A stretch of 64,000 nucleotides of DNA from Macrostomum lignano. Lineage: Eukaryota. The notes below the pieces were generated by a model. The model was given only the letters and a program-made list of their open reading frames with translations, was not told the DNA's origin and did no database searches. Both the position numbers and the translations under genes were made by a program. The stretch is from contig NIVC01002157.1 of NCBI GenBank assembly GCA_002269645.1, positions 124,001 through 188,000 on the forward strand, in the 5' to 3' direction. Numbering within the stretch: position 1 is the stretch's first letter; each line of letters begins with the position of its first letter. Positions 8,755 through 34,338 of the stretch are shown here, in pieces.

Positions 8755-9017
8755 CTGCTTGTCGGCGCGCATAGTCATCGACACAACGTCGGACCCGGCA
8801 TTTGGTTCCGACATTGCTAGCGCGCCAATCCATTCGCCGCTAATTAATTTCGGCAGGTAACGGCTCTTCTGCTCGTCGGTGCCGTGTCGGACAATCTGAT
8901 TGACGCACAGGTTCGAATGGGCTCCGTAGCTTAGGGCCACTGCGGCGCAGGCCCGGGACATCTCCTCCATTACGATGGCGTGATCCAGGTAGGAGGCGCC
9001 CAGGCCACCGTACTCCG
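8755..9017 (-). CDS. IVD: Isovaleryl-CoA dehydrogenase, exon 4
   Basis: [22 protein letters not shown]...[10 protein letters not shown]...[17 protein letters not shown]. Acceptor cccAG at 9019-9018, donor GTAATA at 8754. Confidence 0.95.
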
Positions 9018-9044
9018 CTGGGGAAATTCCATGGTAAAGGTGGT

Positions 9045-10681: not shown

Positions 10682-11750
10682 CTAAAAAGGAGAATATAAA
10701 ATTTGTTAAGCAACTAAAAAATTAAAGAAATAATTCTTAACGAATTAATCACAATTAAAACATTTGAATTTTTCCTATGTAACATTATTTTCTTTTCATG
10801 GGATCTTTGATGGAAGGGTAAGGATCTTTGATGGGAGGGTAGGGATCTTTGATAGGAGGGTAAGGATCTTTAATAGGAGGGTAGGGATCTTTGATGGGAG
10901 GGTAAGGATCTTTACCTTACCCTTTTACCCTTTACCCTTACCCTTTACCCTTTACCTTTACCTTTACCATATTGATGGCGTAAGGAAAAACTTAGCTATA
11001 TATAACTTCATCAGCTTTGTACAAATGGAGCAAAGAGAAATCCATTATGTAATATATGACCTGGATGGCCACATACTTTGTTGCCTCAACTGGTTATGGA
11101 AGCAAAGCAATAATGCCCATAGGCCTTAACAGTTTTATAAGCAAGCAAAAATTATTAGAGCTTAGCAGGTTTGCACTCCATAGTTCAGATCATGGCAGGC
11201 ATAGGCTAGAATGAAAATTCATGTTTTTTCAATTTTACACTAATGTAAAATAAATAAAATTTTTACACCAAGACTAAAATTGTTTATACGTCATTTTTTA
11301 AAGAATATATATTTTTAGGAATTCAAAACTTTTATTAAACTTTAAAATGGCTGTTTTTTGCTAAAAACTGATTTTCTTTGTTTTAATTTTGACTTTCTTG
11401 TGATTACATTATTATTTTCTAGTTTAGTTTCTGATTTTTTAAAGAGCTTTCAACGTTGGTTGATATTTAACTACATGTTTACATTAGCCTTGAACTTGGC
11501 TATTTTTTGTATACCAACTACGTACACTTCATGTTGAACTTGAAAATTATATACGCCAAGTGTATGCCAAGATTGTCAGCAAGACCAAAAATACACTGGA
11601 AAATTCTTGCATAAAGGAATAGAAAATTCTGGAACCACCTTCTGGACTATGGTTTATACTAAAGAATAAAATTATAATGAAAACTTAAATACATAGGCCT
11701 ATACAGTGTGCATTTAGAATTTAGATGCCAATTATAGTAACAAGTACAAT

Positions 11751-12716
11751 TGTTGTATCCCCCTTCCTCGCTGGCACGGCCGGGTTGGGCGACGGGTAGC
11801 GGTGTCGGGGTTCGGGTACTAGACTGCCCAGGGCTTACGAGCTCGATCGGCGACCCCGAGGCGTACGGACACTTCGGGGGGAGGTCAAGGTTGAGAAGTC
11901 GAGAGAGAGGGGAGGGGCGGCTGTGGGCGGGCGGCCACTCGACAGCCTGGTGAGTCAAGGAAGAGAGAGAGGGCTGCGGGCGGTCGGCCACTCGACAGCC
12001 TGGTGAGTCAAGGAAAAGAGAGAGGGCTGTGGGCGGGCGGCCACTCGACAGCCTGGTGAGTCAAGGAAGAGAGAGAGGGCTGCGGGCGGTCGGCCACTCG
12101 ACAGCCTGGTGAGTCAGACTGAGGAGAGAGTGAGAGAGAGAGAGATCAGGAGAGCGACCCCGAGGAACACAGGCAATTGTCTCGACAGCTTACCGGGCCG
12201 GGTCGATTTTAGCACTCATACACGGGAAGGCCGATCGATTGCAATAAATTGAGTCTTCGCAGTAAGAGACCGTCTCTACGGTTGATCGCTGGTCACGTTC
12301 GTTTTTTTATCGCGGTGGGCGCAAATGGGCGCAGGCACGGTGAGAAAAGGGGCGGGGTCTGAGCGTCGCCTTAAATAACGAGTAAAAAAGGGGCAGGGGC
12401 GCAAACAAGGGGGGGGAGAAAGGGCTTAAACAATGGAGCTGATTGACAGCTGATTGGCTGCGGCGAGGGGAGGGTGGAAGCGCGCACGGCCAGGGAGAGG
12501 GAGAGAGAGCAGAGGCCCAGCCAATCAGCACGGCTAGCCAAAGGGCTAAACAGCCAAGGCGAGAGAGAGAGAGAAAGAGAGCAGAGGCTCAGCCAAAGGG
12601 CTCATAGCTCCAGACTGGCTTGAGCCGGGGGGGGGGGGAACAATAATCAACTACCAAAGTCAACAACTATCAAAGTGCACTTGCACCAGGGGAGCACTGT
12701 GACACAGGTCACAACA
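11751..12716 (-). repeat. 3' LTR (966 bp)
   Basis: TG...CA termini; immediately preceded on the - strand by the PPT; near-identical to 19586-20556. Confidence 0.96.
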
Positions 12717-12727
12717 CCCTCCCCCTA
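12717..12727 (-). promoter_or_regulatory. Polypurine tract (AGGGGGAGGG) abutting the 3' LTR
   Basis: Plus strand reads CCCTCCCCCT directly after ACAACA. Confidence 0.88.
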
Positions 12728-12819
12728 AAAAAAAGAAAACGACGCGCTTTGACTGAATGAAAATTAAAAAAAAATGTAATGAAATGAAACTGAATGAAAG
12801 AGACCAAGAGTGTCAGGCA

Positions 12820-13225
12820 GCGGCCGAGAGCGCAGGACAGGGGCCGAGGATGTCGGACAGGCCGAGAACACCGGGCACGGCCGAGAATGCCGGACTGTGG
12901 CCGAAAACGCCGGGCATGGCCGAGAATTCCGGACAGCGACCGAGAATGCCGGGCAGCGGCCGAGAACGCCTGGCATGGCCGAGAATGCCGGACAGCGGCC
13001 GAGAATGCCGGGCAGCGGCCGAGAATGCCGGGCAGCGACCGAGAACGCCGGGCATGGCCGAGAGTGCCGGACAGCGGCCGAGAATGCCGGGCAGCGGCCG
13101 AGAATGCCGGGCAACGACCGAGAACGCCGGGCATGGCCGAGAGTGCCGGACAGCGGCCGAGAATGCCGGGCAGCGGCCGAGAATGCCGGGCAACGACCGA
13201 GAGCGCCGGGCATGGCCGAGAGTGT
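12820..13225. repeat. GC-rich about 20-bp tandem array (GGCCGAGAATGCCGGGCAGC) in the retrotransposon 3' UTR
   Basis: Direct inspection; causes six overlapping repetitive ORFs. Confidence 0.92.
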
Positions 13226-13354
13226 TCCCCGCCCTTCCTTCGGGGCCGCTCCCAGTGCCAAACAGAGGGATCACAACGACGATCAGAGGAGAGATGGGAT
13301 GAAATGAAGGAGTGAAGGTCTCTTGCCCGCCCTGGCATCCTGCCCCAGAACCCC

Positions 13355-14236
13355 CTAGACCGCCACCTCCGCCGCCCGGCGCAACAACCCCAACACGCGT
13401 CCTCCGTCGATTAGTTCAAACTGAGGGATCGCAACACTCATGACGAACCGAGTGCTTCGCTTGAAGGCAGGCCGCCGCCAGACACGCCGAGCATGACCCC
13501 GACACTTGGCGCTGATGTCACGGAGAATGAACTTGACAGTCTGAGCCAAAAGCTCGGCGATTTCGCGTCGATGATCCAGCCGCTCGCTGCCGCACAGTCC
13601 CACCATTTCAGTCAAAAGCCGGAACATCGCAGCTGGACTCCCCGACAACAAAGCGTGCCGAAGCTCCGACCGGATTCGAGCTCTTCGCTGCGTTGCCTCC
13701 CCGCTCCAGGTGTATTCCACCTCGGTACTCGGCTCGCTCCTCATCAGCCACGCTGGCGACTCCCGTTGGTCGATGACGAGCTCCGGTTCGTCTTCTGACA
13801 TCGAAGTTTCGCCGTCGGATTCATTCAAGAGCTCTTCTTCCTCTGACTGCGTGATTTCACAGCAGCTCTGAGCAGTCTCCTCGCCGCCGCAACCACCACG
13901 CTCGCTTCCTTCCGACTCCCTGTCCTCGTCTGACTCTTCTGTTTCGTCTTCAATCGTTACGACAAACTCCTCCGGGACGCACATCCCATCCGGCGGGACA
14001 AAATACCGGGCGCACTCGAGCGGGTTGCTAACGGCATCCTGCCCGAACCGGTCGTACAGCGCTCGTCGAAACGGACACAGCAGGACCGCACTCGCATGCT
14101 GCAGCCTCTGGAAATTCTCCGTTCCACCGGGTCCACACTTGTCGGGGTGCCGTCGCAGGCTCTCACGGCGGTACGCACGTCGCAGCTCCTCCTCCGTCGC
14201 GAAGGGGCTGACACCAAACTCGGCGTAGAGGTCCAT
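13355..14236 (-). CDS. Retrotransposon ORF3: class C J-domain (DnaJ/Hsp40-type) protein, 293 aa from the first ATG
   Basis: MDLYAEFGVSPFATEEELRRAYRRESLRRHPDKCGPGGTENFQRLQHASAVLLCPFRRALYDRFG follows the full J-domain consensus, with HPD at 14149-14141. An acidic linker and a predicted helical C-terminal region follow. No introns; same strand as gag-pol; inside the LTRs. Confidence 0.9.
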   Translation of the reverse strand: MDLYAEFGVSPFATEEELRRAYRRESLRRHPDKCGPGGTENFQRLQHASAVLLCPFRRALYDRFGQDAVSNPLECARYFVPPDGMCVPEEFVVTIEDETEESDEDRESEGSERGGCGGEETAQSCCEITQSEEEELLNESDGETSMSEDEPELVIDQRESPAWLMRSEPSTEVEYTWSGEATQRRARIRSELRHALLSGSPAAMFRLLTEMVGLCGSERLDHRREIAELLAQTVKFILRDISAKCRGHARRVWRRPAFKRSTRFVMSVAIPQFELIDGGRVLGLLRRAAEVAV

Positions 14237-14419
14237 GCCCGGAAAGCAGTGCCTGCAACAACCACGACTCACTTTTGAGAGCAGGGCAATGGTTCCTTCG
14301 AGCCTCTTTGGGGCGCCGATCCTTCATCCCTGATGGCAGGGTTGGGCAGGTGGGACCTCCACTGACGGGCCTTAAGAGGGGAAATATATATTTTTGTTTG
14401 TGAAGCCCAGTTTTCAATA

Positions 14420-14612
14420 ACGCGGGTGATGACGCAGACGATGCTTCGAACCAAATGTTGATGACGCAGGTGATGACGCGGATGATGCTTCGAACCAAAT
14501 ATTGATGACGCAGGTGATGACGCGGATGATGCTTCGAACCAAATGTTGATGACGCAGGTGATGACGCGGATGATGCTTCGAACCAATTATTTATGACGCA
14601 GGAGATGACGCG
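14420..14612. repeat. 44-bp tandem repeat (about 4 copies) between pol and ORF3, rich in TGACGC
   Basis: Unit GATGACGCAGGTGATGACGCGGATGATGCTTCGAACCAAATGTT; units start at 14460, 14504 and 14548. Confidence 0.9.
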
Positions 14613-14639
14613 ACATTGCGCACGCACTCACGTCCGCTC

Positions 14640-17428
14640 TTAATAATAAACGGGCGTTCCATAACGCTGCGGAACCCTTCGATCCCTCTGGGGTCGACCT
14701 TCGATGACTTCAACTGGCGCTTCCGGCTGCGGCTGCACTCCTGGCTGCTGCACATCCATTGGTTCTCCCTCCTCTCGAACCCGCCCGGAATGTCGCCACC
14801 ATCGCTCCTCATCCTCATCGTCCGATTCCTGCGAGTCCTCCCTGACGGATTCCGTCTCTTGAGCAGGACCTGGGTGGTACCTCCTTGGTGCAGGACGCCG
14901 AGGGCCACCGGTGCCGTCGACCGGGTACTTCCGGTACCGAGGCAGGAGGTTGTTAAAGTGCACCACCTTGATCGGCTTCCGTCGACCTTCCTGTCGAATC
15001 CTATAGCGCGTCTCCGACAGCTTCTCGAGAACTACGGCAGGTCCGGTCCAGGGTGAGTGGAGCTTCGCTTTGGCACCGGCCTTCAACACGGGGTTGTAGA
15101 CGAACACCTCGTCGCCAGCCACGAATTCTCGACCCTTCACCTTCCGGTCGTACCAGTCTTTCTGCACTCGTTGATATGACGTTATTCTCTCACGCACCAC
15201 CCGATGGGCTTCCACGAGCGTCTCCCGCAGGTTCTGGACTTCCTCGCAGTACGGTTCGATGTCCAGTGGGCGCGCCACTCCCAAGTCAACTGGCAGAGAC
15301 ATCTCGCGACCATGCAGAAGGAAGAAGGGTGAGTAGCCGGTGCCGCGGTGCACACTGGAGCGATACGCCATGAGCGCCGGGGCAACGAATTCGTCCCACC
15401 GCCTCTGATCCGGCTCCTTCACCAGGTGCGCCCGGATCACTGCAGTCAGCGTCTTATTGAAGCTTTCCACTTGGCCGTTTCCAGAGGGGTGATAGGCGGT
15501 CGTACGCGTCTTTCGGATATTCAGACTTTCGCACAGCTGGCCGATCAATTGCGACTCGAAATTGGCTCCCTGATCCGAGTGGATTGTTCCTGGGGCTCCG
15601 TAGTGACAGACCCACTCCTCGAGCATTGCCCTTGCACAGGTGCTGGCCGTCTGATCTGGCACCGGTACTGCCACTGGCCACTTACTGAACGCGTCCTGCA
15701 TCGTCAGTATGTATTTGTTGCCTCGGACGCTGGTTGGCAGTGGTCCAATCAAATCCACCATCACTCTTTCAAACACATGGCTGCTGGGAATCGGCTCCAA
15801 TGGGGCCTTCCGCCGCATCCCGGGCTTGCTCCGGTTACAGTCGTCACACCTTCGCACAAACTCCTCGACCTCTCGCTTCAAGCCGGGTCTCCAGAATCGG
15901 TTCCTGACTTTCTCCAGAGTCTTTGCTACGCCGAAGTGTCCACCTCCTGGTCCAGAGTGCAGCGTCTGCAGAGCGTCGGGGATCAATTTCTTCGGGAGAA
16001 CAGCCCGCGGTGGGTGACGTCCCAGATCCTTGATGACGAGGGTGTTGTCCACAATTTCCAGCCGAGGCTTTTGTGCCCAGATGGCTCGGGTCGTTGGTGA
16101 CGCACCCCGAGGTGGCTCTTCGTTTGCTCGGCCGGCGTGCATCGACTGGTAAACTGGAGCGATGTCGTTGTCCACAGCTTGTGCTGCTGCCAGCTCATCT
16201 CGGCTGAGCAACCCGAGCAGCGTCGTTACCCTGACCCCGGGGAGGTCATCAGTCCGGCACGACGGGCAGTTATCCATTTCGGGATGTCGTCGCGTCGGCT
16301 TGCGTGACAGCGCGTCCGCATTCTGATGACGCGCCCCTGGCCGATGCTCCACTGCGAAGTCGAATGGCGCCAACCTCTCCATCCACCGAGCCAACTGGCC
16401 TTCCGGCTGCCTCATACTTCGGAGCCACTGCAGACTTGCGTGGTCGGTGCGCACCCGGAACCTCCGGCCAAGTAGATAGTACCGGAACCTCTCTGCGAAT
16501 GTCACCAGCGCCAGGAGCTCGATTCGTGTCGTGCAATAGTTGAATTCGGCCCCTTGCAGACGCCGACTCCCGTACGCAATAACCCGCTCTGACCCGTCTT
16601 CTTGTACCTGCGACAAGACTGCTCCGAGACCCTGTCGGGTACTTCCATCGGTATCCAAGATGAACTCACCAGCCGTGGGGTCGAAGTTCGGGTAGGCCAT
16701 CACGCGGCAACCGGTCAATTCTTCTTTCAGCTTTTTGAAGGCCTCATCGTGTTCCTCTCTCCAACTGAACGGCTTGTCTTTCTTTGTCAGATCAAAAAGT
16801 GGTGCAGCGACTATCGAGAATTCTGGTATGAAGTTTCGGTAGTAACCAGCCAGACCCAGGAACGACTGAAGGTCTTTTGCATTTCTTGGAATGCTCCAGT
16901 CACGGACTTCCTTGATCTTCTCCGGGTCGACATCGATTCCGTCCTTTGACACGACGTGGCCAAGGAATTTGACCTCATCGGCCAGGAATCTGCACTTAGA
17001 TGGCTTTAGCCTCAAGTTGGCTGCGCGCAGGCGCTGGAATACCGCCTCGAGATTCGTTAGATGCTCGCTGACAGTTCGGGACCAAATGATGATATCGTCG
17101 ATGTAGACGAGCGCCATTTTCCACAGAAGGTCGTGTAGTACCATATTCATCAACCTTGTGAATGTCGCCGGCGCATTGGTCAATCCGAAGGGCAGCACCT
17201 TGAACGCGAATTGCCCCCGATGCGGAATGACAAAAGCAGTCTTTTCTTGATCCTCCCTTTTGACCTTAACTTGCCAATAGCCGGAGCAAAGGTCGAGCGT
17301 CGAAAATACAGCCGCACCTCCGAGCGCTTCAAGTGCGTCATCGACACGCGGGATTGCTATGGCGTCCTTGACAGTTCGTTGATTCAACTCTCTGTAGTCG
17401 ACACACAGTCGCAGTTCCCCATTCTTTT
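14640..17428 (-). CDS. pol: Pol: reverse transcriptase, RNase H, integrase
   Basis: RT (LDLCSGYWQV, PFGLTNAPATF, VYIDD), RNase H (LDTDGS, ELLAL, TDH, ADALSR), integrase HHCC (H...GGHFG...CDDC), D-D-E (VDLIG, SDQG, GQVESFN) and WTGPAVV (GPY/F-like). Joined to the protease ORF by a 1-nt shift at 17425-17428. Confidence 0.95.
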
Positions 17429-18616
17429 ACGGACACAGACCACTGGCGAACTCCACGGCGATTGGGTCGGTTCAATCATCTTCGTTGCCAAAAGCTCGTC
17501 GATTTGTCGGTCGACTTCGCCGCGCCAATGTGGCGGTAGCCGTCGCGGAGGCTGTTTTACGGCTGTTCCGGTGGTCTCAATTTCATGCTGCACGATGTCC
17601 GTCGTCCCGAGGCGCGCTGTACTCTCTGCGAAAACATCTGCGTATCGATTCACCAATCTTAGGAAACTCGCTTTGTCTGCCCCCGTGAGCTGCTTGGAGC
17701 CGTGCTGGTTCAGTGCCGCCTCTGGGTCCCATGGATCGCAGCTGGGTCGTAAAACCGACGCTTGCTCTTCGATGCTGGCTACCAGAACCTCTTGAGCCGG
17801 ATCTGATGGTCGAAACCAGCCGATGACAGCTCCCTTCCGCAGCCGCAGCTCGGAGTCCGTGACATTCGCGAAGTGAACTGGTAGGGTGTTGCCCTGCTGG
17901 ATGAGGCAGACGCTCCTGGCTAGCATTGGTCTCTCATCGCTCTTCAGTTTTTCGTCTGGCTCGGCGACGCCGAGCACTCCGGAATTCTGTGTCGCTGTTC
18001 TCCGAATCCTGGCTGAGACGGTCCGTTCGTGATTGGCCGGAATGATCAAGTTTTCGTTCAGGTACAACCGGCAGACGACTGGTTTGTGCTTGGTCTCTCG
18101 GATTGGCACACGTGAACCGTTCACGCGGAAAACTCCTCCGGCGAAATCGATTTGGCACCGGTGGCGGCGTAAGAAGTCGGTGCCTAGCAACAGTTCGTAG
18201 CCGACCCCTTGGACCACCGCAATTGGCGTCTGTAAAGTTTCTGATCCGAACTGTAGGGGAAGCGACGCGCATCCTAACACATTCATGGGAGTTCCGTTCG
18301 CTGAGATCAGGTGGGTTTCCGAAGGGCTGAGTTCAACTCGAACCGACTTGCTCAACTGCCGCCAGGTCCTCTCGTTCACCAGCGACATGACCGAGCCCGA
18401 ATCCAACAGACACGGCAACTCAATCTCGCCAATTTTTACCGACACGTAGATTGACACGGGATTAAAAGCTGTTGCAGGTTGATCTCTATCTCTTGAGCAG
18501 TCCGCCGGACATCCTGCTGCACGTCGCTCCGGGGCTGCATCTTCGTCTCGGGTTGGGGCCTCTACTGTCTCGGCGGAACTCCCTCGCCCCTGCGGAAGTT
18601 CCCCTTGCCGTTTCCC
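17384..18616 (-). CDS. pol: Gag-Pol transframe region, aspartic protease and RT N-terminus (-1 frame relative to gag)
   Basis: CLLDSGS and LLGTDFL protease motifs; VKQPPRRLP and IEPTQSPWSSPVV (RT start). Checked codon by codon: the frame is open from the GGGAAAC heptamer at 18616 to the ORF-track start at 18457. Confidence 0.9.
   Translation of the reverse strand, partial: GKRQGELPQGRGSSAETVEAPTRDEDAAPERRAAGCPADCSRDRDQPATAFNPVSIYVSVKIGEIELPCLLDSGSVMSLVNERTWRQLSKSVRVELSPSETHLISANGTPMNVLGCASLPLQFGSETLQTPIAVVQGVGYELLLGTDFLRRHRCQIDFAGGVFRVNGSRVPIRETKHKPVVCRLYLNENLIIPANHERTVSARIRRTATQNSGVLGVAEPDEKLKSDERPMLARSVCLIQQGNTLPVHFANVTDSELRLRKGAVIGWFRPSDPAQEVLVASIEEQASVLRPSCDPWDPEAALNQHGSKQLTGADKASFLRLVNRYADVFAESTARLGTTDIVQHEIETTGTAVKQPPRRLPPHWRGEVDRQIDELLATKMIEPTQSPWSSPVVCVRKRMGNCDCVSTTES
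18554..18616 (-). promoter_or_regulatory. Putative -1 programmed ribosomal frameshift signal: G GGA AAC heptamer, 7-nt spacer, H-type pseudoknot
   Basis: Minus strand reads GGGAAAC GGCAAGG GGAACTTCC GCAGGGGCGA GGGAGTTCC N15 GCCCC. Stem 1 is 9 bp (one G-U); loop GGGGC can pair with downstream GCCCC. Confidence 0.78.
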
Positions 18617-19542
18617 TGTTGCTGACGGGTTGGGCAGTTAGTCGCGATGTGCCCTGGCTTGTTGCAGAAGAAGCAGCGAATTCCTCCCGTTCGTCGAGGC
18701 TTCTGATGGTCGCCTTCGTCGGAGTCGGTCGGTCGAGCTGCGGCGCTGCTATGCGGTTCCGCTCTCAGCGACTCGAGCTGAACCACTTTGCCTTGAAGCT
18801 GCCTCACCAGTTTCTTCAACTCCTCGAGCTCTTTGTCCTTTTCTTGGGAGTAGGCTCCATCCTCCCGAGGCACAGATTCCGCCGCGCCGCTCACCACGAA
18901 GACTCCTCGGTGGCCGCTGCCAGTTGCTCCAGCCGATCTCGGTCCCTTCGCCGCCTTGGACGCCGCCTCGAGCTGCCTCACCGCGCGTTGTGCTGCCACC
19001 AGACCTTCGGGCTGCTGCAGGTAGAGCTTCTCTCGCTGGAGGTCGGAGAGTCTCACCCCTTGCATGAAGCGATCCTTCGCGAGGTCGTCCTGCAGCTCGG
19101 CAGTTGCCGCCGGGTAGGCACAGCGCACCAGTTCAAGGAGAGCATCTGCGTAGGCCTCCAACGACTCGCCATCCTTCTGATCTCGGGTTTTTAGCTCGAC
19201 CTTGCTGTCCTGCTCTGTCCGGTACCGGGAGAAGCGAGCCTCCAACCGGGCGGTGAATCCCTCGTAGTCCAGCGGATCCACAGGATCGTCGGGTCCCGGC
19301 AGGTTCAGATTATCGACCGCAGCGTACGCCGTAGCGAGATCCAGCATGCTCATCAAGTGCTCGCGACGATGCTCCTCGTCAATCTCGGCGGAGTCGCAAT
19401 AAGCGTTGAAAGAGCGCAGCCAGAGTCGAAAATTCATGCTTGACGTGTACTTCACGGGCTTCGGGAGTCTCGGTGGCTGGGCTGGTCCATCCGCTCGCAG
19501 ACGCTCGGCTAGCAGCCGAATCAGTTCGTCCACATTCGCCAT
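18562..19542 (-). CDS. gag: Gag with CCHC zinc knuckle
   Basis: 326 aa; CFFCNKPGHIATNC (CX2CX4HX4C); ATG lies 24 nt after the PBS; coiled-coil-like segment precedes the knuckle. Confidence 0.93.
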   Translation of the reverse strand: MANVDELIRLLAERLRADGPAQPPRLPKPVKYTSSMNFRLWLRSFNAYCDSAEIDEEHRREHLMSMLDLATAYAAVDNLNLPGPDDPVDPLDYEGFTARLEARFSRYRTEQDSKVELKTRDQKDGESLEAYADALLELVRCAYPAATAELQDDLAKDRFMQGVRLSDLQREKLYLQQPEGLVAAQRAVRQLEAASKAAKGPRSAGATGSGHRGVFVVSGAAESVPREDGAYSQEKDKELEELKKLVRQLQGKVVQLESLRAEPHSSAAARPTDSDEGDHQKPRRTGGIRCFFCNKPGHIATNCPTRQQQGNGKGNFRRGEGVPPRQ

Positions 19543-19566
19543 GACAGCTCACAAGCAAACTGAGCA

Positions 19567-19584
19567 GTCCCTGTTCGGGCGCCA
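19567..19584 (-). promoter_or_regulatory. Primer binding site TGGCGCCCGAACAGGGAC (tRNA-Lys(UUU) type)
   Basis: 18 nt located 1 nt inside the 5' LTR end; identical to the well-known tRNA-Lys3 PBS sequence. Confidence 0.92.
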
Positions 19585-19585
19585 A

Positions 19586-20556
19586 TGTTGTATCCCCCTT
19601 CCTCGCTGGCACGGCCGGGTTGGGCGACGGGTAGCGGTGTCGGGGTTCGGGTACTAGACTGCCCAGGGCTTACGAGCTCGATCGGCGACCCCGAGGCGTA
19701 CGGACACTTCGGGGGGAGGTCAAGGTTGAGAAGTCGAGAGAGAGGGGAGGGGCGGCTGTGGGCGGGCGGCCACTCGACAGCCTGGTGAGTCAAGGAAGAG
19801 AGAGAGGGCTGCGGGCGGTCGGCCACTCGACAGCCTGGTGAGTCAAGGAAAAGAGAGAGGGCTGTGGGCGGGCGGCCACTCGACAGCCTGGTGAGTCAAG
19901 GAAGAGAGAGAGGGCTGCGGGCGGTCGGCCACTCGACAGCCTGGTGAGTCAGACTGAGGAGAGAGTGAGAGAGAGAGAGATCAGGAGAGCGACCCCGAGG
20001 AACACAGGCAATTGTCTCGACAGCTTACCGGGCCGGGTCGATTTAGCACTCATACACGGGAAGGCCGATCGATTGCAATAAATTGAGTCTTCGCAGTAAG
20101 AGACCGTCTCTACGGTTGATCGCTGGTCACGTTCGTTTTTTATCGCGGTGGGCGCAAATGGGCGCAGGCACGGTGAGAAAAGGGGCGGGGTCTGAGCGTC
20201 GCCTTAAATAACGAGTAAAAAGGGGCAGGGGCACAAACAAGGGGGGGGAGAAAGGGCTTAAACAATGGAGCTGATTGACAGCTGATTGGCTGCGGCGAGG
20301 GGAGGGTGGAAGCGCGCACGGCCAGGGAGAGGGAGAGAGAGCAGAGGCCCAGCCAATCAGCACGGCTAGCCAAAGGGCTAAACAGCCAAGGCGAGAGAGA
20401 GAGAGAAAGAGAGCAGAGGCTCAGCCAAAGGGCTCATAGCTCCAGACTGGCTTGAGCCGGGGGGGGGGGGGGGGGGGTAACAATAATCAACTACCAAAGT
20501 CAACAACTATCAAAGTGCACTTGCACCAAGGGAGCACTGTGACACAGGTCACAACA
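19586..20556 (-). repeat. 5' LTR (971 bp)
   Basis: TG...CA termini; followed by the PBS on the - strand; contains 4x53-bp repeats, CCAAT boxes and a TATTTAA box. Confidence 0.96.
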
Positions 20557-21660
20557 CAATCTCTAAGCATGTATTTCAATCCTATATTTTACAGACTATT
20601 GATTGAGTAACAATCTTTACCTATAAAAATCAAAACTCTGTCTGTCTGTCTGTGGACAAATTACTTTGTTTATGTAGTAGCGGTACCTTATTTCTAGGAA
20701 TTATTGTTTTTGAACTAACGCGAAAATTAATATTCTTTTGTTATAATACGCAAAATATTCTCAAGTTATAAGAGTTTGTTTTAAATATACGCGATTGATT
20801 GGTATAAATAGGAGAGAGCCGAAGGGATGGAAGAATAACTCGTTCGTTAGCTATAAGCTCAAAATGTGTTCGATAAACATTCTCAGATCTTTGCTCATTT
20901 TAAAAAGGTATTGAAAGTCAGAATTGGGAATTCATGCAGAGAGAGTACTAAGAATAATCGCTGTGACCCTCTAATCTTGGTAACGCCCAGACTGGAGAGA
21001 GAAAGTACATATACCAGTAAGACCGCTCAGGCCATATACTAAGAACGCTACCAGACTAATACATAAGACGCTACCAGACTAATACATAAGAACGCTACCA
21101 GAAACGCTACTAAAAATGCTACCCAGAAAATACATGAGATTCTAAGAAACAGTTAGAAATACTAAAAGCAGAATTTAGTATCAGCAGTATAAATTCGATA
21201 GCAGGGAATTTGAAGGCCTGTCCCTGTCACAACTTGGTAACAGCGGTGAAATCATTTGTAGGGACAGAAGTTACCCCTGGAACATTTACATATATAACAA
21301 AAAAATCAAGTCACAATTTACAGCTTAGAAAAATCTTGGGATAACAAAGTGTCTTCAAAAAATGGTCACTTTGTCATCTAGATTTCTAACCATTTTTGGT
21401 ATGACAAAGTGTCCAAAAACCATGGTCACTTCATCATCTAGATGATGAACTGGTAGGATGACAGTGTCTAGGAACTATATAGGCCTACCCAAATAAAAAT
21501 TAAATAATTACAAATTCATGCCAAAAGTCTTTTATACATATTACAATATATTTAAACAAACATGCATAGGCATAGGCCTAGCCCAAACCTAATTATTAAA
21601 ATAGGCCTACAATATACACATACTACATAGTCACTTTGGTTTTGATGCATCAATTTTTAC

Positions 21661-22157: not shown

Positions 22158-24093
22158 GTGAGAAATGTCTAGAAAAAGAATTTTTCAAATAATTGGTGCC
22201 CAATATTCGAATTCTGTTATTCACATCTATATTTTGACCTTGTTTGATATTTGGACAAATCTATCAAACATAAAAATAGATTTGGACATAATTTAATCTA
22301 TAATAAGCTAACGCCTCCTAGCTACTATTGTTTATTGTTGCCCTCTACATGTAGTGCCAGCTTGCAGACTTAAGTTACGGGAAACTACGTCTCTTAAAAA
22401 ATGTTTACGAGGCTTATTTTCGCCGAAAAAAACACTACGTAGATAGGAAGCTATTATTTTTCAGCACAATAATGTTATTGCTTACGATAGGAGTCAGAAC
22501 CAATGTTAAGGTTGTCTAGCCATCACTAAAAATGTAGAAAAAAGAACCACAGAATTTGGCAATCTTTTCGAATCGTTCGTTTAGTTATTTCCGGAATTAT
22601 TTCGCCCTCTATTCAAGGGTGGTGGGGGTTTGTAGGAGATCTGAGATTACCTAATTATAAGGCTATTTTGCTCTAGTTAGGCCTATATCTTCCTATATGA
22701 TAAAAGAGAATATGAAAAATTGATTAGCAATTAGACCTCTTATCATTCTAGATTTTTTCTTTGATAAAATTTATTCCTAATGACAATTTTTCTTTTAAGG
22801 TAGCTCTGTGCCAAATAATTTTTATTGCTTTTTTTCAAAATTAAAAAATTATTCCTAATGTGATTCCTAATTTTTCATATTTTGTTTAATAGGTAAAATC
22901 AGGTAAAAATAATGTTAACATTTTATTTCTATGAAACAGATTCAAATACAAGTTTTACCAGTATTTTTGAATTTTGGTTGTTTTGTCCCCAGACATTTCA
23001 CCCCCAGACCATTTTGCCCAGGCATTTTGGCCAAAATGGTAATTAATTATGTGATTTATAAATATAGCCATACTATGCATCTCTTTAGCTCACCTAGTAG
23101 GCCATTACTAACCTAATACTAAACCTATTAGCAACCTAACCTAATGTATCTTACAGTGGCATAGCCAGAGTTAGTGGCTTACTTCTACATATTGCTGCAT
23201 ATATAATATTATAAAGGCACATTTGAGCCATTCATTTTATACTATTATCCACTTACTTATAAAATAGGCTAAATTATCTTAGATACTATTCTTCTATACA
23301 ACTTCACAATTACAACCAGATTCTTGATCAACTTATTTTCAATCTTGATTTTTTATTAAAATTTTTGGTCAATCTTGCTTAAAAAACAAAAATCTAATCT
23401 CAGTTGGACTCTATAAGATAATGCAGTATCTACATAGGAAAAACTTTTTTCTATTTGTATTTATCTAAGCTGTTAAAACCTAGTGGATTTTGAATACCAG
23501 GAATTCCAATCCCTAGAACTGCAAACATTGATATTGTTGGCTGGGATACTACGCAGAATCTCAGGCAGTCTCTCTGACTCTAAAACATGTATTGGCAAAC
23601 TCTGGTCTCTGCCTTTGACTCTCCTCTTTTTCCTCTTTCCTCTCTTCCCCTGTTTCTCCTATCTCTTGTCTGTTCACTCTCATCTTTGCTCTCTCATCCC
23701 CCTCTTTTTATCTGTCATCTTAACTTCTTTATTGTCTTATATTTTCTCTCACCTCTCTCTTCTGTACTCTTTTCTTTCCCCTCTTTTGACTCCTCACTTT
23801 CCTTTCTCCTTTCTTCTCTTCTATTCTATCTTCTATACTCTCTCCCTCTCTTGTCTCCTATCTTCTCTCTCCACTTTTTTCTTTTCTCCTTTATCTCTCA
23901 TCTCTCCTTAGGCTTACATCTCTCATCTCTACAACCCTATCTCTTCTCTCTTCCTTTTACTCTCTCATATCTCCTTCCACCTCTGCTCTCTTCTCCCCTG
24001 TCTCCTCTATCCTCTCATCTGCAGCTCTCTGCTCTCTTCTCTCTCCACTCTCCCCTCTTCTTTCTCCCCTCTTCTCCCCTTCTCTCTTTCCCT

Positions 24094-24155
<62 letters not shown>

Positions 24156-25190
24156 CCTCACCCCTTCATTTATCTTATTTTCTTCTATCTTTTCTCTTAT
24201 CTTCTCTATCACCTCTCTTTTTGAATCATCTATTCCTTCTTCATTCCATTCTCATCTGCCCCTCAGCCATGAGCTAGATTCTTTATTTGGCCTTTGAGGT
24301 AAAACTCTACCCATCCCTGCTTGGAAAACCAGTTTGTGGGATGTAGTACTCTCATGGTTGTTCTCATGCTTTGATCACGTTATCTTTCTTACCAATTTGC
24401 AGCCTTGAAAAGAAATTATGTATCTTCAGCTCCATTGCAATCTGCATCAGTCTAACAACCAAGGAAACACACATTTCTTAGAAGGCTATTTAAATTTTAA
24501 ATTACCTTTAAGAGAAACTTAGAATTTCTATAGTATGACTAATTTAGTAGGGTTGTATTGCATTGCGTTGCCTTTTTATAAATCTTTCGCTTTTACAAAC
24601 CATGCTGGATTGCCTTGATTTGCCAATTGCTATCCACTGTTAAACTGCTGCAGAGTTTGCCTATATAGAGGGCAGTGATTATAATTTCTCACTAAACTAT
24701 TATGGCTAAACCAAAATGTAGCCTCTCTATTGGGGTGCAAAGAAGGCTATAAATAAAGCTATTCCAAAACATTGTATATTTGCTATGTATATTCAGCCCT
24801 ATTGCCTGACCCTTTGTCTGGCTCAAGGTGCATAGTGCCATTTAGGATTAAATTTGAGACTCAAAATATTACAGGATTTTGTCAATATAGTTGACAATAA
24901 TTGTCTATGTCAAATTTGAAAAGAATCAGTAGAAGTAAAGTAGTGCTATGGAGGATTTAGTGAAAAAATGCATTTCTTTAACAGTTTTTTTTTGCTTTTT
25001 AGGTAGAAAGACTTGGATTAAGGAAATTTTAAGGTAGCCTAAGTTATTCGCCAAAGTGAGTTTAGGGTGGGTGCAAAATTTGGTATAGTTTGGTTGAGCA
25101 ATTTGGGAGTCCATAGCAATAAAAATTGTATATACATAGACACACAGACAGACAGAGTTTTCATTTTTATAGGTAGATATAGCTTATCCA

Positions 25191-25367: not shown

Positions 25368-25607
25368 GTTCAGATTATCGACCGCAGCGTACGCCGTAGC
25401 GAGATCCAGCATGCTCATCAAGTGCTCGCGACGATGCTCCTCGTCAATCTCGGCGGAGTCGCAATAAGCGTTGAAAGAGCGCAGCCAGAGTCGAAAATTC
25501 ATGCTTGACGTGTACTTCACGGGCTTCGGGAGTCTCGGTGGCTGGGCTGGTCCATCCGCTCGCAGACGCTCGGCTAGCAGCCGAATCAGTTCGTCCACAT
25601 TCGCCAT
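25368..25607 (-). pseudogene. gag: Truncated gag 5' fragment (80 codons) carried by the duplication
   Basis: Identical to the gag N-terminus up to AVDNLN, then runs through the junction into host sequence and stops at 25326. Confidence 0.9.
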
Positions 25608-25650
25608 GACAGCTCACAAGCAAACTGAGCAGTCCCTGTTCGGGCGCCAA

Positions 25651-26622
25651 TGTTGTATCCCCCTTCCTCGCTGGCACGGCCGGGTTGGGCGACGGGTAGC
25701 GGTGTCGGGGTTCGGGTACTAGACTGCCCAGGGCTTACGAGCTCGATCGGCGACCCCGAGGCGTACGGACACTTCGGGGGGAGGTCAAGGTTGAGAAGTC
25801 GAGAGAGAGGGGAGGGGCGGCTGTGGGCGGGCGGCCACTCGACAGCCTGGTGAGTCAAGGAAGAGAGAGAGGGCTGCGGGCGGTCGGCCACTCGACAGCC
25901 TGGTGAGTCAAGGAAAAGAGAGAGGGCTGTGGGCGGGCGGCCACTCGACAGCCTGGTGAGTCAAGGAAGAGAGAGAGGGCTGCGGGCGGTCGGCCACTCG
26001 ACAGCCTGGTGAGTCAGACTGAGGAGAGAGTGAGAGAGAGAGAGATCAGGAGAGCGACCCCGAGGAACACAGGCAATTGTCTCGACAGCTTACCGGGCCG
26101 GGTCGATTTTAGCACTCATACACGGGAAGGCCGATCGATTGCAATAAATTGAGTCTTCGCAGTAAGAGACCGTCTCTACGGTTGATCGCTGGTCACGTTC
26201 GTTTTTTTATCGCGGTGGGCGCAAATGGGCGCAGGCACGGTGAGAAAAGGGGCGGGGTCTGAGCGTCGCCTTAAATAACGAGTAAAAAAGGGGCAGGGGC
26301 ACAAACAAGGGGGGGGGAGAAAGGGCTTAAACAATGGAGCTGATTGACAGCTGATTGGCTGCGGCGAGGGGAGGGTGGAAGCGCGCACGGCCAGGGAGAG
26401 GGAGAGAGAGCAGAGGCCCAGCCAATCAGCACGGCTAGCCAAAGGGCTAAACAGCCAAGGCGAGAGAGAGAGAGAAAGAGAGCAGAGGCTCAGCCAAAGG
26501 GCTCATAGCTCCAGACTGGCTTGAGCCGGGGGGGGGGGGGGGGTAACAATAATCAACTACCAAAGTCAACAACTATCAAAGTGCACTTGCACCAGGGGAG
26601 CACTGTGACACAGGTCACAACA
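25651..26622 (-). repeat. Third LTR copy (duplicated 5' LTR with its PBS)
   Basis: TG...CA termini, PBS at 25632-25649, CAAT flank. Arose by segmental duplication; not a solo LTR. Confidence 0.95.
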
Positions 26623-27915: not shown

Positions 27916-30159
27916 TACTATTATTTAAAGTATTAAATAATTTTACTCGTATTAGAATTAAATAAAGTGTTTCACGAACAAAATGCTGTGATCAAGTGCC
28001 GGCAAACTAATATTGTAAGTTTGTACTTGTAGTAATAATGTTAATATTTTTACACTTAGGTAGAAATACTACGGCGTTCGAAGAATATTTAACATATTTT
28101 AAAATATGGAAACCCAGTGACTAATAACAAATACAAACTGTAAATTAGGGGAAAATCATACTATTCCTTTCTAAAACTAGACCACACAGTTTTTTAAAAA
28201 ATTATTCTATGGATGATATACAGGTGAGAAATGTCTAGAAAAAGAATTTTTCAAATAATTGGTGCCCAATATTCGAATTCTGTTATTCACATCTATATTT
28301 TGACCTTGTTTGATATTTGGACAAATCTATCAAACATAAAAATAGATTTGGACATAATTTAATCTATAATAAGCTAACGCCTCCTAGCTACTATTGTTTA
28401 TTGTTGCCCTCTACATGTAGTGCCAGCTTGCAGACTTAAGTTACGGGAAACTACGTCTCTTAAAAAATGTTTACGAGGCTTATTTTCGCCGAAAAAAACA
28501 CTACGTAGATAGGAAGCTATTATTTTTCAGCACAATAATGTTATTGCTTACGATAGGAGTCAGAACCAATGTTAAGGTTGTCTAGCCATCACTAAAAATG
28601 TAGAAAAAAGAACCACAGAATTTGGCAATCTTTTCGAATCGTTCGTTTAGTTATTTCCGGAATTATTTCGCCCTCTATTCAAGGGTGGTGGGGGTTTGTA
28701 GGAGATCTGAGATTACCTAATTATAAGGCTATTTTGCTCTAGTTAGGCCTATATCTTCCTATATGATAAAAGAGAATATGAAAAATTGATTAGCAATTAG
28801 ACCTCTTATCATTCTAGATTTTTTCTTTGATAAAATTTATTCCTAATGACAATTTTTCTTTTAAGGTAGCTCTGTGCCAAATAATTTTTATTGCTTTTTT
28901 TCAAAATTAAAAAATTATTCCTAATGTGATTCCTAATTTTTCATATTTTGTTTAATAGGTAAAATCAGGTAAAAATAATGTTAACATTTTATTTCTATGA
29001 AACAGATTCAAATACAAGTTTTACCAGTATTTTTGAATTTTGGTTGTTTTGTCCCCAGACATTTCACCCCCAGACCATTTTGCCCAGGCATTTTGGCCAA
29101 AATGGTAATTAATTATGTGATTTATAAATATAGCCATACTATGCATCTCTTTAGCTCACCTAGTAGGCCATTACTAACCTAATACTAAACCTATTAGCAA
29201 CCTAACCTAATGTATCTTACAGTGGCATAGCCAGAGTTAGTGGCTTACTTCTACATATTGCTGCATATATAATATTATAAAGGCACATTTGAGCCATTCA
29301 TTTTATACTATTATCCACTTACTTATAAAATAGGCTAAATTATCTTAGATACTATTCTTCTATACAACTTCACAATTACAACCAGATTCTTGATCAACTT
29401 ATTTTCAATCTTGATTTTTTATTAAAATTTTTGGTCAATCTTGCTTAAAAAACAAAAATCTAATCTCAGTTGGACTCTATAAGATAATGCAGTATCTACA
29501 TAGGAAAAACTTTTTTCTATTTGTATTTATCTAAGCTGTTAAAACCTAGTGGATTTTGAATACCAGGAATTCCAATCCCTAGAACTGCAAACATTGATAT
29601 TGTTGGCTGGGATACTACGCAGAATCTCAGGCAGTCTCTCTGACTCTAAAACATGTATTGGCAAACTCTGGTCTCTGCCTTTGACTCTCCTCTTTTTCCT
29701 CTTTCCTCTCTTCCCCTGTTTCTCCTATCTCTTGTCTGTTCACTCTCATCTTTGCTCTCTCATCCCCCTCTTTTTATCTGTCATCTTAACTTCTTTATTG
29801 TCTTATATTTTCTCTCACCTCTCTCTTCTGTACTCTTTTCTTTCCCCTCTTTTGACTCCTCACTTTCCTTTCTCCTTTCTTCTCTTCTCTTCTATCTTCT
29901 ATACTCTCTCCCTCTCTTGTCTCCTATCTTCTCTCTCCACTTTTTTCTTTTCTCCTTTATCTCTCATCTCTCCTTAGGCTTACATCTCTCATCTCTACAA
30001 CCCTATCTCTTCTCTCTTCCTTTTACTCTCTCATATCTCCTTCCACCTCTGCTCTCTTCTCCCCTGTCTCCTCTATCCTCTCATCTGCAGCTCTCTGCTC
30101 TCTTCTCTCTCCACTCTCCCCTCTTCTTTCTCCCCTCTTCTCCCCTTCTCTCTTTCCCT

Positions 30160-30219
<60 letters not shown>

Positions 30220-34165: not shown

Positions 34166-34338
34166 AAGGAGAGGGGGGAAGTGAGAACAGACGAAATTGG
34201 AGAGGAGAGAAGAGAGGAGACAACAGAGAAGAGAGCTGAGCAGAGACAAACCTTGAGCGGCCCGGATTGCTATTGTGAAGTTTCAAAGGACCCGAGGGCT
34301 GGAACGGATCGAGAGGCTTCGCGGGCTTCTACTTATAG

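What the first reader, a model, noticed from the sequence alone, without database searches (positions are those of the whole stretch)
13355..14236. Ty3/Gypsy retrotransposon encodes its own Hsp70 co-chaperone (J-domain ORF3) in the env position
Seen: between the pol stop (14640) and the PPT/3' LTR, on the gag-pol strand, lies an intact, intronless, GC-rich 293-aa ORF. Its N-terminal about 65 aa form a complete J-domain with HPD, followed by an Asp/Glu-rich linker and an about 110-aa basic/helical C-terminal region I do not recognise. It lacks the G/F region and CXXCXGXG repeats (so class C) and shows no signal peptide or TM anchor (so not env). Established: J-domains stimulate Hsp70 ATPase through HPD; polyomavirus T antigens and some pestiviruses use or capture J proteins; Hsp70/Hsp90 machinery assists capsid assembly and Argonaute/Piwi loading. 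Inference: this may be a retrotransposon lineage that recruits or diverts host Hsp70, either to fold/assemble Gag-Pol particles or as an anti-silencing factor. I know of no described LTR-retrotransposon family with this cargo, but I could not search.
Basis: partly seen in the sequence, partly recalled or inferred. Interest (0 to 1): 0.92.

Follow-up and report, generated by a model that had tools for sequence, protein, structure and literature searches.

The report
Flatworm retrotransposon encoding J-domain co-chaperone
A group of jumping genes in the flatworm Macrostomum lignano carries, after the usual gag and pol genes, its own conserved gene for a J-domain protein, the kind of adaptor that switches on the cell's Hsp70 chaperone; I found no earlier description of this for a retrotransposon.

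Summary
Window 13355-14236 (minus strand) is an intact 293-aa ORF. It lies inside a young 8.8-kb Ty3/Mdg4 (Gypsy) LTR retrotransposon (11751-20556) of Macrostomum lignano, between pol and the polypurine tract. It has a full J-domain with HPD (Pfam DnaJ, E 1e-12), a disordered acidic linker and a basic five-helix C-terminal domain (CTD) that matches nothing known.

It is not a one-off capture. Homologous ORF3s follow pol in a second copy, in three other M. lignano families (pol about 50% identical), in two public read-set assemblies and in a Mediterranean microbial-mat metagenome. On a pol tree the ORF3 carriers form one clade (100% bootstrap). The nearest ORF3-less elements form another. A clade member chosen from the tree alone proved to carry ORF3. 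Non-synonymous change is below synonymous change in all 15 pairs. No host DNAJ resembles it closely.

One lineage added an HP1-like chromodomain. Another lost HPD. A YAG sits right before the ATG, which suggests a spliced or trans-spliced mRNA.

Best reading: an element-encoded class-C J-protein that recruits host Hsp70 to a client bound by the CTD. The client and expression are untested. This is a new variant of the known non-env ORF3 kind.

The parts
11751..20556 (-). Whole LTR retrotransposon (8806 bp), Ty3/Mdg4 (Gypsy) superfamily, host Macrostomum lignano. It is flanked by a 4-bp target-site duplication ATTG at 20557-20560 and 11747-11750.
   Evidence: LTR pair and ends; duplication read directly; best pol hit is 100% identical to an M. 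lignano protein.
19586..20556 (-). 5' LTR (971 bp, TG...CA). It contains a 53-nt x3.7 internal repeat and no canonical heat-shock element.
   Evidence: The two LTRs differ by 2 substitutions and 4 indels, one of them in a poly-C run.
19567..19584 (-). Primer-binding site: 18 nt starting TGG, one base after the 5' LTR.
   Evidence: Read. L013 has the same ending of the site. Which tRNA it matches was not tested, because the window holds no tRNA gene.
19548..19552 (-). GTGAG, a splice-donor-like motif in the leader just before the gag ATG.
   Evidence: L013 has GTGAGT right after its primer-binding site. This is an inference only.
18562..19542 (-). gag, open, 326 aa, with one CCHC zinc knuckle.
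14640..18637 (-). pol (protease, reverse transcriptase, RNase H, integrase with zinc-binding, core and p58-C domains), in the -1 frame relative to gag with a 76-nt overlap. In this copy it is broken by one frameshift and has no internal stop.
   Evidence: Pfam. The -1 overlap is shared with relatives. Relatives and the second copy read through in one frame.
14420..14612 (-). 44-nt x4.4 tandem repeat in the pol-ORF3 spacer, followed by a TATATAT stretch. It is a possible lineage-specific internal promoter.
   Evidence: Other families have spacers of only 83-100 nt.
14253..14267 (-). Splice-acceptor-like motif (pyrimidine-containing tract ending CAG), 16 nt before the ORF3 ATG.
   Evidence: A YAG ends 0-1 nt before the ATG in 5 of 7 independent ORF3 loci (P about 3e-5), and 7 or 16 nt before it in the other two.
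13355..14236 (-). ORF3, open, 293 aa plus stop: a class-C J-domain protein.
14030..14233 (-). J-domain (residues 2-69); HPD at 14141-14149.
   Evidence: Pfam DnaJ E 1.3e-12. PDB sequence match to DNAJB1 and Sis1. AF2 pLDDT about 88, and Foldseek rmsd 1.0-1.5 A to solved J-domains.
13715..13960 (-). Acidic linker predicted to be disordered (residues 93-174).
   Evidence: pLDDT below 50; pI 4.1; only 14-30% identical between most families.
13361..13702 (-). C-terminal domain (CTD, residues 179-292): a basic five-helix bundle, specific to this family and of unknown fold class.
   Evidence: pLDDT 80-92. Conserved in all homologues. No Pfam, PDB-sequence or Foldseek match.
12816..13221 (-). 20-nt GC-rich tandem array (about 21 copies) in the 3' untranslated spacer.
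   Evidence: L002 has a similar array after its ORF3; L003 has none.
12717..12726 (-). Polypurine tract AGGGGGAGGG, directly before the 3' LTR.
11751..12716 (-). 3' LTR (966 bp).

Best explanation
ORF3 is a true gene of the element. It was acquired once at the base of a clade of Macrostomum-associated Ty3/Mdg4 retrotransposons and has been kept by selection since.

The protein is a class-C J-domain adaptor:
- The N-terminal J-domain, with its HPD loop and basic helix II, docks on the host's Hsp70 and triggers its ATPase.
- The disordered acidic linker gives reach.
- The basic five-helix CTD chooses the client.

I think the client is most likely a nucleoprotein complex of the element's own cycle in the nucleus or on chromatin, for example the incoming capsid or pre-integration complex, or its chromatin target. 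Hsp70 would remodel or take that complex apart.

The mRNA is most likely made by splicing or spliced-leader trans-splicing at a YAG just before the ATG.

Shown: the gene, its domains, its conservation, its link to one pol clade and purifying selection. Inferred: Hsp70 recruitment (about 0.7), the nuclear or chromatin client (about 0.35) and the mode of expression (about 0.5).
For: Domains. The J-domain is complete and has HPD. It is predicted with pLDDT about 88 and superposes on solved J-domains at 1.0-1.5 A.

Distribution. ORF3 homologues follow pol in L001, L002, L003, L004, L007 and L013, and occur on contigs L006 and L008. The carriers form one pol clade with 100% bootstrap. The nearest relatives are compact 5.6-5.8-kb elements whose 3' LTR follows pol directly, and they form a separate clade, also at 100%. 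From the tree I predicted that P0008 would carry ORF3, and it does.

Selection. HPD is kept in 7 of 8 families. The J-domain is 36-73% identical between HPD-bearing families, the CTD 23-41% and the linker only 12-54%. pN is below pS in all 15 pairs; in the closest pair the J-domain dN/dS is about 0.11. No close host DNAJ exists in the collection.

Nuclear or chromatin hints. One lineage (L003) inserted an HP1-class chromodomain in the linker (Pfam E 9e-9; best PDB matches CBX5, Swi6, Rhino). Another (L004) added a weak TatD-nuclease-like extension. The CTD has pI 11.6.

Expression. A YAG ends 0-1 nt before the ATG in 5 of 7 loci, P about 3e-5, against 2-65 nt at gag start codons. A GTGAG donor-like motif lies in the leader. 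In this host 38.8% of genes are trans-spliced and about 7% of transcription units are polycistronic (PMC5730564).
Against: No transcript, peptide, Hsp70 interaction or localisation data were available.

The CTD matches nothing, so the client is a guess. The chromodomain and the TatD-like piece are each in one lineage only. Pfam finds no chromodomain in the window's ORF3.

The L004 lineage lost HPD but kept the CTD, so the CTD may work without Hsp70.

The pyrimidine tracts before the YAG are weak (0.47-0.67).

The organisms behind four of the nine loci are unknown. Synonymous sites are saturated, so dN/dS values are rough.

This copy has a broken pol, so it need not be active itself.
Confidence: 0.6

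Rival explanations
1. Particle chaperone. The CTD binds the element's own Gag or Gag-Pol in the cytoplasm. The J-domain brings Hsp70 to fold or assemble virus-like particles, or to uncoat them, much as auxilin brings Hsc70 to clathrin coats.
For: It rests on the same conserved J-domain and CTD. That Hsp70 and J-proteins help assemble or disassemble capsids of many viruses is established knowledge. Large DNA viruses and phages encode their own J-proteins. ORF3 diverges about as fast as gag: 28-32% against 33-43% identity between families. That pace fits co-evolving partners.
Against: A profile comparison found no similarity between the CTD and the element's gag. The two lineage-specific additions, a chromodomain and a TatD-like piece, point to chromatin or DNA rather than to particles. 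Nothing here tests binding.
Confidence: 0.22
2. Anti-silencing factor. The protein diverts or recruits Hsp70 to disturb host transposon control, for example by evicting heterochromatin proteins at H3K9-methylated copies or by interfering with chaperone-dependent loading of Piwi/Argonaute.
For: L003's ORF3 carries an HP1-class chromodomain, the reader module for H3K9 methylation. Other Ty3/Gypsy elements have acquired host-derived regulatory domains, for example an m6A demethylase domain in orchids (PMC9289625, abstract seen).
Against: The chromodomain is in one lineage only, and one of its three aromatic-cage positions is not aromatic (sequence). No small-RNA or chromatin data were available. 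The CTD has no recognisable relation to silencing proteins.
Confidence: 0.1
3. The CTD is the working part and the J-domain is dispensable or vestigial. ORF3 would then be an Hsp70-independent accessory protein, for instance an RNA-export or RNA-binding factor like CERV of Cer1 or Rev of lentiviruses.
For: The L004 lineage lost HPD and scores below the Pfam cut-off for DnaJ, yet kept the CTD. The CTD is strongly basic. Cer1 shows that a non-env ORF in this position can be an RNA-export factor made from a spliced mRNA (PMC10309623).
Against: Seven of eight families keep HPD. The J-domain is the best-conserved part, with the lowest dN/dS (0.11-0.29 in the less saturated pairs). That is not what a vestige looks like.
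Confidence: 0.06
4. Passive cargo or artefact: a host DNAJ fragment recently transduced by one copy, or an ORF open by chance in GC-rich DNA.
For: Long chance ORFs are common in this 60% GC element. GC and GC3 of ORF3 do not distinguish it from host exons.
Against: Homologues about 30% identical sit at the same position in at least seven other families or contigs. pN is below pS everywhere. No near-identical host protein exists in the collection.
Confidence: 0.02

Closest known systems
Non-env ORF3s captured by LTR retrotransposons (bdelloid rotifer Vesta, Juno and TelKA families: GDSL esterase, DEDDy exonuclease; PMC5408684)
   Same: [quoted passage not shown] It is family-specific, of cellular type, absent from the basal or nearest relatives, and usually expressed from a spliced message.
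   Different: The cargo is a J-domain co-chaperone plus an unknown helical domain, which that paper does not list. The host is a flatworm. Expression was not examined here.
CERV of the C. elegans Ty3/Gypsy element Cer1 (PMC10309623)
   Same: It is a non-env accessory protein encoded in the 'env position' and made from a spliced mRNA. It has lineage-restricted sequence and helical domains joined by flexible linkers.
   Different: CERV has no J-domain and is required for nuclear export of genomic RNA. There is no sequence relation. ORF3 here starts with its own ATG and does not borrow gag exons.
Virus-encoded J-domain proteins: polyomavirus T antigens (established knowledge), DnaJ-like proteins of giant viruses and phages, baculovirus Bjdp
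   Same: A mobile genetic parasite carries its own J-domain with HPD to engage host Hsp70, joined to a parasite-specific client-binding part.
   Different: Those are DNA viruses. Here the carrier is a reverse-transcribing LTR element. The non-J parts are unrelated.
Cellular class-C J-domain proteins with a client-specific C-terminal domain, for example auxilin or the histone-binding DNAJC9 (recalled from memory, not tested)
   Same: The architecture is a J-domain plus linker plus one dedicated client-binding domain, with no G/F or zinc-finger region.
   Different: The CTD profile matches no Pfam family or solved chain. The J-domain is closest to DNAJB1/Sis1-type J-domains at only 40-45% identity.
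Chromoviruses (Ty3/Gypsy elements with a chromodomain at the integrase C-terminus; established knowledge)
   Same: The sister family L003 carries an HP1-like chromodomain.
   Different: That chromodomain is inside ORF3, next to a J-domain, and not on integrase. The window's pol and ORF3 have no detectable chromodomain.
Heat-inducible M. lignano LTR retrotransposons with heat-shock elements in their LTRs (Ustyantsev et al. 2025, PMC12801592)
   Same: Same host and same superfamily, and a thematic link to the heat-shock system.
   Different: This family's LTR has no canonical heat-shock element. That paper mentions no J-domain, ORF3 or chromodomain.

Membership tests
J-domain protein (Hsp40/DnaJ family) | J-domain fold: a four-helix domain matching PF00226 above its gathering score | tested here: met
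   48.1 bits against a cut-off of 27.8, covering the whole model. AF2 model superposes on solved J-domains at rmsd 1.0-1.5 A.
J-domain protein (Hsp40/DnaJ family) | His-Pro-Asp tripeptide in the loop between helices II and III | tested here: met
   H30-P31-D32 at 14141-14149. It is kept in 7 of 8 families and lost in L004.
J-domain protein (Hsp40/DnaJ family) | Stimulates the ATPase of an Hsp70 partner | not testable with these tools
   No biochemical data. It is inferred from HPD, the basic helix II and purifying selection.
Class C (type III) J-protein | No Gly/Phe-rich region, no CXXCXGXG zinc finger, no DnaJ C-terminal substrate-binding domain | tested here: met
   DnaJ is the only Pfam family matched at E 0.01 or better; PF00684 and PF01556 are absent.
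Ty3/Mdg4 (Gypsy) LTR retrotransposon | Two LTRs ending TG...CA, target-site duplication, primer-binding site and polypurine tract | tested here: met
Ty3/Mdg4 (Gypsy) LTR retrotransposon | gag with a CCHC knuckle; pol in the order protease, RT, RNase H, integrase | tested here: met
   Pfam hits in that order. gag and pol overlap in the -1 frame.
Ty3/Mdg4 (Gypsy) LTR retrotransposon | Assignment to a named clade (Mag, CsRN1, Gmr1/Osvaldo and others) | not tested
   No reference clade sequences were at hand. According to PMC12801592, 78 of 137 M. lignano families are Mag.
Env-bearing retrovirus-like element (errantivirus type) | ORF3 with a signal peptide and transmembrane anchor or fusion-protein features | tested here: not met
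   Maximum 19-residue hydropathy is 1.09. The protein begins directly with the J-domain.
Chromovirus | Chromodomain at the C-terminus of integrase | tested here: not met
   pol has no Chromo hit. The only chromodomain is inside ORF3 of the sister family L003.
LTR retrotransposons with a captured non-env ORF3 | [quoted passage not shown] | tested here: met
LTR retrotransposons with a captured non-env ORF3 | ORF3 expressed from a spliced subgenomic mRNA | tested here: inconclusive
   Only motifs support it: a YAG at or next to the ATG (P about 3e-5) and a GTGAG in the leader. No RNA data.
Heat-shock-element LTR retrotransposons of M. lignano | Canonical nGAAnnTTCnnGAAn element in the LTR | tested here: not met
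   The only match in the window is at 11622-11634, outside the LTR and at chance level.

The most novel reading that the evidence does not exclude
A retrotransposon lineage has built its own chromatin-directed Hsp70 recruiter. The J-domain protein, which in one sub-lineage has an HP1-type reader of H3K9 methylation, brings the host's disaggregase to heterochromatin or to the silencing machinery. This lets the element integrate into repressive chromatin or escape from it. It would be a chaperone-based counter-defence not known for any transposon.
Probability: 0.12. Interest if true: 0.88.

Novelty: new variant of a known kind. Interest (0 to 1): 0.64.

Why it matters
LTR retrotransposons are usually thought to borrow host chaperones. 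This clade instead encodes the adaptor that commands Hsp70, as polyomaviruses and giant viruses do.

If that is right, it adds a new class of accessory gene to retroelements. It also gives a natural handle on which step of the retroelement cycle needs Hsp70. The domain additions in sister lineages (an HP1-like chromodomain and a nuclease-like tail) hint at a link between chaperones and chromatin targeting.

The host is a laboratory model with a genome, transcriptomes and transgenesis, and 21% of its genome is LTR elements. Some of those elements have separately wired themselves to the heat-shock response.

There is a practical point too. TE-encoded J-domains can be mis-annotated as host 'J domain-containing proteins'; UniProt already holds one such model. 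That can inflate host DNAJ counts.

Tried and rejected
1. Direct protein search with ORF3. It found only a bacterial DnaJ. The word-indexed search misses relatives this distant, and ORF3 is not annotated in the M. lignano genome.

2. Profile search with the seven-sequence ORF3 alignment. It was swamped by ordinary DnaJ. It did reveal the UniProt model A0A1I8HEH7.

3. Metagenome scan. A CTD profile had no stretch conserved enough to search with. The J-motif scan returned one locus, L009, which is a bacterial grpE-dnaJ locus and a false lead.

4. Identity of the CTD. Pfam, PDB sequence profile, Foldseek against PDB and BFVD with two models, and hhalign against the element's own gag gave nothing meaningful.

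5. Heat-shock elements in the LTR: none. A link to the published heat-inducible families is therefore rejected for this family.

6. A chromodomain remnant in the window's own linker. One alignment suggested it, but Pfam does not support it. It stays open.

7. Weak tblastn hit to ORF3 in L005. It lies in that element's 3' LTR and is chance.

8. Within-family dN/dS between the window and L001. There is only one substitution in ORF3, so it has no power.

9. Base composition as a sign of foreign origin. It is uninformative, because host exons are equally GC-rich.

10. Rfam and tRNA scans of the window found nothing.

A four-sequence alignment was used instead.
Full report
**1. What is in the window**

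The region 11751-20556, read on the minus strand, is a complete LTR retrotransposon of 8806 bp.
- Two LTRs of 966 and 971 bp end in TG...CA. They differ by two substitutions and four indels.
- A 4-bp target duplication, ATTG, flanks them.
- An 18-nt primer-binding site starting TGG follows the 5' LTR by one base.
- A polypurine tract, AGGGGGAGGG, abuts the 3' LTR.
- gag (18562-19542) is open and has a CCHC knuckle.
- pol has protease, RT, RNase H and integrase domains in that order. It overlaps gag by 76 nt in the -1 frame, the same layout as its relatives, so this is a normal programmed-frameshift arrangement.
- Within pol, this copy has one additional frameshift and no internal stops. Relatives and a second copy read through in one frame.

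The best pol hit is 100% identical to a Macrostomum lignano protein, and the next hits are about 50-54% identical. The host is therefore this free-living flatworm. The surrounding DNA is 45.5% GC, rich in minisatellites, and holds exons of an acyl-CoA dehydrogenase and a Ctr copper transporter.

**2. The observation**

ORF3 (13355-14236, minus strand) is open for 293 aa from an ATG that aligns with the start of all homologues.
- Pfam DnaJ covers the entire model: 48 bits, cut-off 27.8, E 1.3e-12.
- The closest solved J-domains are DNAJB1 and Sis1, E about 1e-12 and about 40-45% identity. The alignment shows HPD, the basic helix II and the helix III/IV signature in place.
- No G/F, zinc-finger or DnaJ_C domain is present, so it is class C.
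- No segment is hydrophobic enough for a membrane anchor.
- With a four-sequence alignment AlphaFold2 gives three parts. The J-domain has pLDDT about 88. Residues 93-174 are a disordered stretch with pI 4.1. Residues 179-292 form a five-helix domain with pLDDT 80-92 and pI 11.6.
- Foldseek superposes the J-domain on solved ones at 1.0-1.5 A.

**3. Is it a gene of the element?**

ORF3 itself found nothing in the word-indexed protein search. I therefore followed pol.
- The identical pol hit lies at a different locus (L001). That locus is a second full copy, 98.6% identical over 7.1 kb, and it includes ORF3. Its pol has at least three frameshifts. Its ORF3 differs by four indels and is not open end to end. 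Most indels look like long-read assembly errors.
- Three other M. lignano families with pol about 50-54% identical each carry a homologous ORF right after pol and inside the LTR pair. They are L002, L003 and L004.
- A full HMMER search with the CTD alone found three proteins in 1.8 billion. Two are complete J-linker-CTD proteins from Logan assemblies of SRR31628435 and SRR31628392. In the second, the end of pol (48% identical) lies upstream.
- The third is from IMG metagenome 3300040801, a co-assembly of brackish microbial mats at the Etang de Berre on the French Mediterranean coast. That contig, L008, has the whole ORF3 with one frameshift.

**4. Link to one pol clade**

I built a neighbour-joining tree of 25 pol proteins (856 columns, 200 bootstraps).
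- The window, L002, L003, L004 and two metagenome proteins fall in one clade with 100% support.
- The nearest other elements form a separate clade, also at 100%. They come from a sea anemone (Actinostola) and from ENA metagenome assemblies. Three of them (L005, L010, L011) are compact, 5.6-5.8 kb, with LTRs of 140-170 bp that begin right after pol and no ORF3. A fourth (L012) has no ORF3 hit and no LTR pair was detected in it.
- From the tree I predicted that the metagenome member P0008 should carry ORF3. Its contig, L013, has gag, pol and then a 264-aa ORF with DnaJ (E 4.7e-19) and the CTD.

ORF3 is thus a shared derived character of this clade. Branching inside the clade is poorly supported (36-64%), so co-phylogeny of ORF3 and pol could not be tested.

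**5. Selection and origin**

- Between families the J-domain is 27-73% identical (36-73% among those that keep HPD), the CTD 20-41% and the linker 6-54%.
- By Nei-Gojobori counts, synonymous sites are saturated (pS 0.65-0.81). pN is lower in all 15 pairs and in both domains. In the closest pair the J-domain has pN 0.15 against pS 0.64.
- All HPD-bearing members share a Cys-Pro motif in helix IV where ordinary DnaJ has Asp-Pro.
- HPD is kept in seven of eight families.
- No protein in a collection that includes the annotated M. lignano proteome is close to ORF3.

A recent passive capture of a host mRNA is excluded. The donor gene is unknown.

**6. Variations that hint at function**

- In L003 the linker holds a chromodomain: Pfam E 9e-9, 35.5 bits against a cut-off of 25.1. 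Its best solved relatives are HP1-alpha (CBX5), Swi6, CBX1 and Rhino. Two of its three aromatic-cage positions are aromatic (sequence).
- In L004 the J-like domain has lost HPD and scores below the cut-off. The CTD is kept, and a 220-aa extension gives weak matches. All of the PDB matches are to TatD nucleases (Pfam 14.7 bits; five PDB hits at E 0.2-0.8).
- The CTD itself matches no Pfam family, no solved chain by profile, no fold in PDB or BFVD, and not the element's own gag.

**7. How it could be expressed**

- A YAG ends 0-1 nt before the ORF3 ATG in five of seven independent loci, and 7 or 16 nt before it in the other two. Given local YAG frequency this has P about 3e-5. At gag start codons the distance is 2-65 nt.
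- The leader has a GTGAG (window, L001) or GTGAGT (L013) just after the primer-binding site.
- In M. lignano 38.8% of genes are trans-spliced, and about 7% of transcription units are polycistronic precursors (PMC5730564).
- ORF3s of LTR elements are typically expressed from spliced messages (PMC5408684).

Splicing or trans-splicing is therefore the likeliest route. In the window's family the 44-nt repeats and a TATATAT stretch upstream of ORF3 could also form an internal promoter. Spacers of only 83-100 nt in L013 and L003 make that unlikely as the general mechanism. None of this was tested with RNA data.

**8. Mechanism and rivals**

A conserved J-domain with HPD under purifying selection is, by established knowledge of the family, a device for engaging Hsp70. 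A class-C architecture means that the other domain selects the client. I therefore read ORF3 as an element-encoded Hsp70 adaptor (about 0.7).

For the client I lean towards a nuclear or chromatin-associated nucleoprotein step. Both independent domain additions are chromatin- or DNA-related, and the CTD is very basic. The rivals are a cytoplasmic role in particle assembly, an anti-silencing role, and an Hsp70-independent role of the CTD. All remain open.

**9. Comparison with what is known**

- Non-env ORF3s in LTR elements are known: bdelloid GDSL and DEDDy ORFs, Cer1 CERV and plant additional ORFs.
- Viral J-proteins are known in polyomaviruses (established knowledge), giant viruses, phages and baculoviruses.
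- I found no report of a J-domain gene in an LTR retrotransposon in six targeted literature searches of about 8.3 million papers. The M. lignano LTR-element paper and the DARTS paper do not mention one either.
- UniProt holds an automatically named 'J domain-containing protein' that is a mis-modelled L004-type ORF.
- This family's LTR has no heat-shock element.
- Repbase, Dfam and GyDB could not be consulted.

**10. Verdict**

The finding is real and is more than one copy. Its structural interpretation is supported. It is a new variant of a known kind (accessory ORF3 in LTR retrotransposons), with cargo not reported before: a J-domain, a novel helical domain and, in one lineage, a chromodomain. 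Function and expression are inferred. Interest 0.64.

Noticed in passing
window 25368-26622 (minus strand): A truncated second copy of the same family: the 5' LTR, the leader and the first 80 gag codons, 99.4% identical to the full element, about 4.8 kb from it.
   Followed up: partly
L003 10953-11933 (chromodomain at ORF3 residues 151-199): The ORF3 of a sister family carries an HP1-class chromodomain between the J-domain and the CTD. A chromodomain in an accessory protein rather than on integrase is unusual.
   Followed up: yes
L004 11943-13505: A 520-aa ORF3 variant has lost HPD, keeps the CTD, and has a C-terminal extension with weak TatD-nuclease-like matches.
   Followed up: partly
window 14420-14612: A 44-nt x4.4 tandem repeat between pol and ORF3. 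Each unit holds two TGACGC-type motifs, and a TATATAT stretch follows about 150 nt before the ORF3 ATG. It may be an internal promoter or enhancer.
   Followed up: no
window 12816-13221; L002 7215-7508: GC-rich 20-nt tandem arrays follow ORF3 in two families but not in L003. In L002 the ORF reads on into the array.
   Followed up: partly
protein P0185 (UniProt A0A1I8HEH7_9PLAT): An automatically annotated M. lignano 'J domain-containing protein' is a gene model stitched from LTR-like sequence and the start of the L004-type ORF. TE-encoded J-domains may inflate host DNAJ counts.
   Followed up: partly
window 8755-9030 (minus) and 34070-34663 (plus): Host exons: the N-terminal domain of an acyl-CoA dehydrogenase (E 1e-24), embedded in 21-nt minisatellites that keep long ORFs open, and a Ctr copper transporter (E 1e-13).
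   Followed up: partly
window 23587-24297 and 29653-30288: Two nearly identical low-complexity ORF-like stretches 6066 bp apart indicate a local segmental duplication. Many other minisatellite arrays occur, for example at 33085-33871, 40803-41333, 53469-54315 and 55570-56656.
   Followed up: no
L013 309-845: A 178-aa called gene upstream of gag in the metagenome element has no Pfam match. It may be LTR or leader sequence or a further small ORF.
   Followed up: no
L008 and L013 (IMG 3300040801): Animal retrotransposon contigs of this clade sit in a co-assembly of Mediterranean brackish microbial mats. They presumably come from meiofaunal flatworm DNA in the sample.
   Followed up: partly
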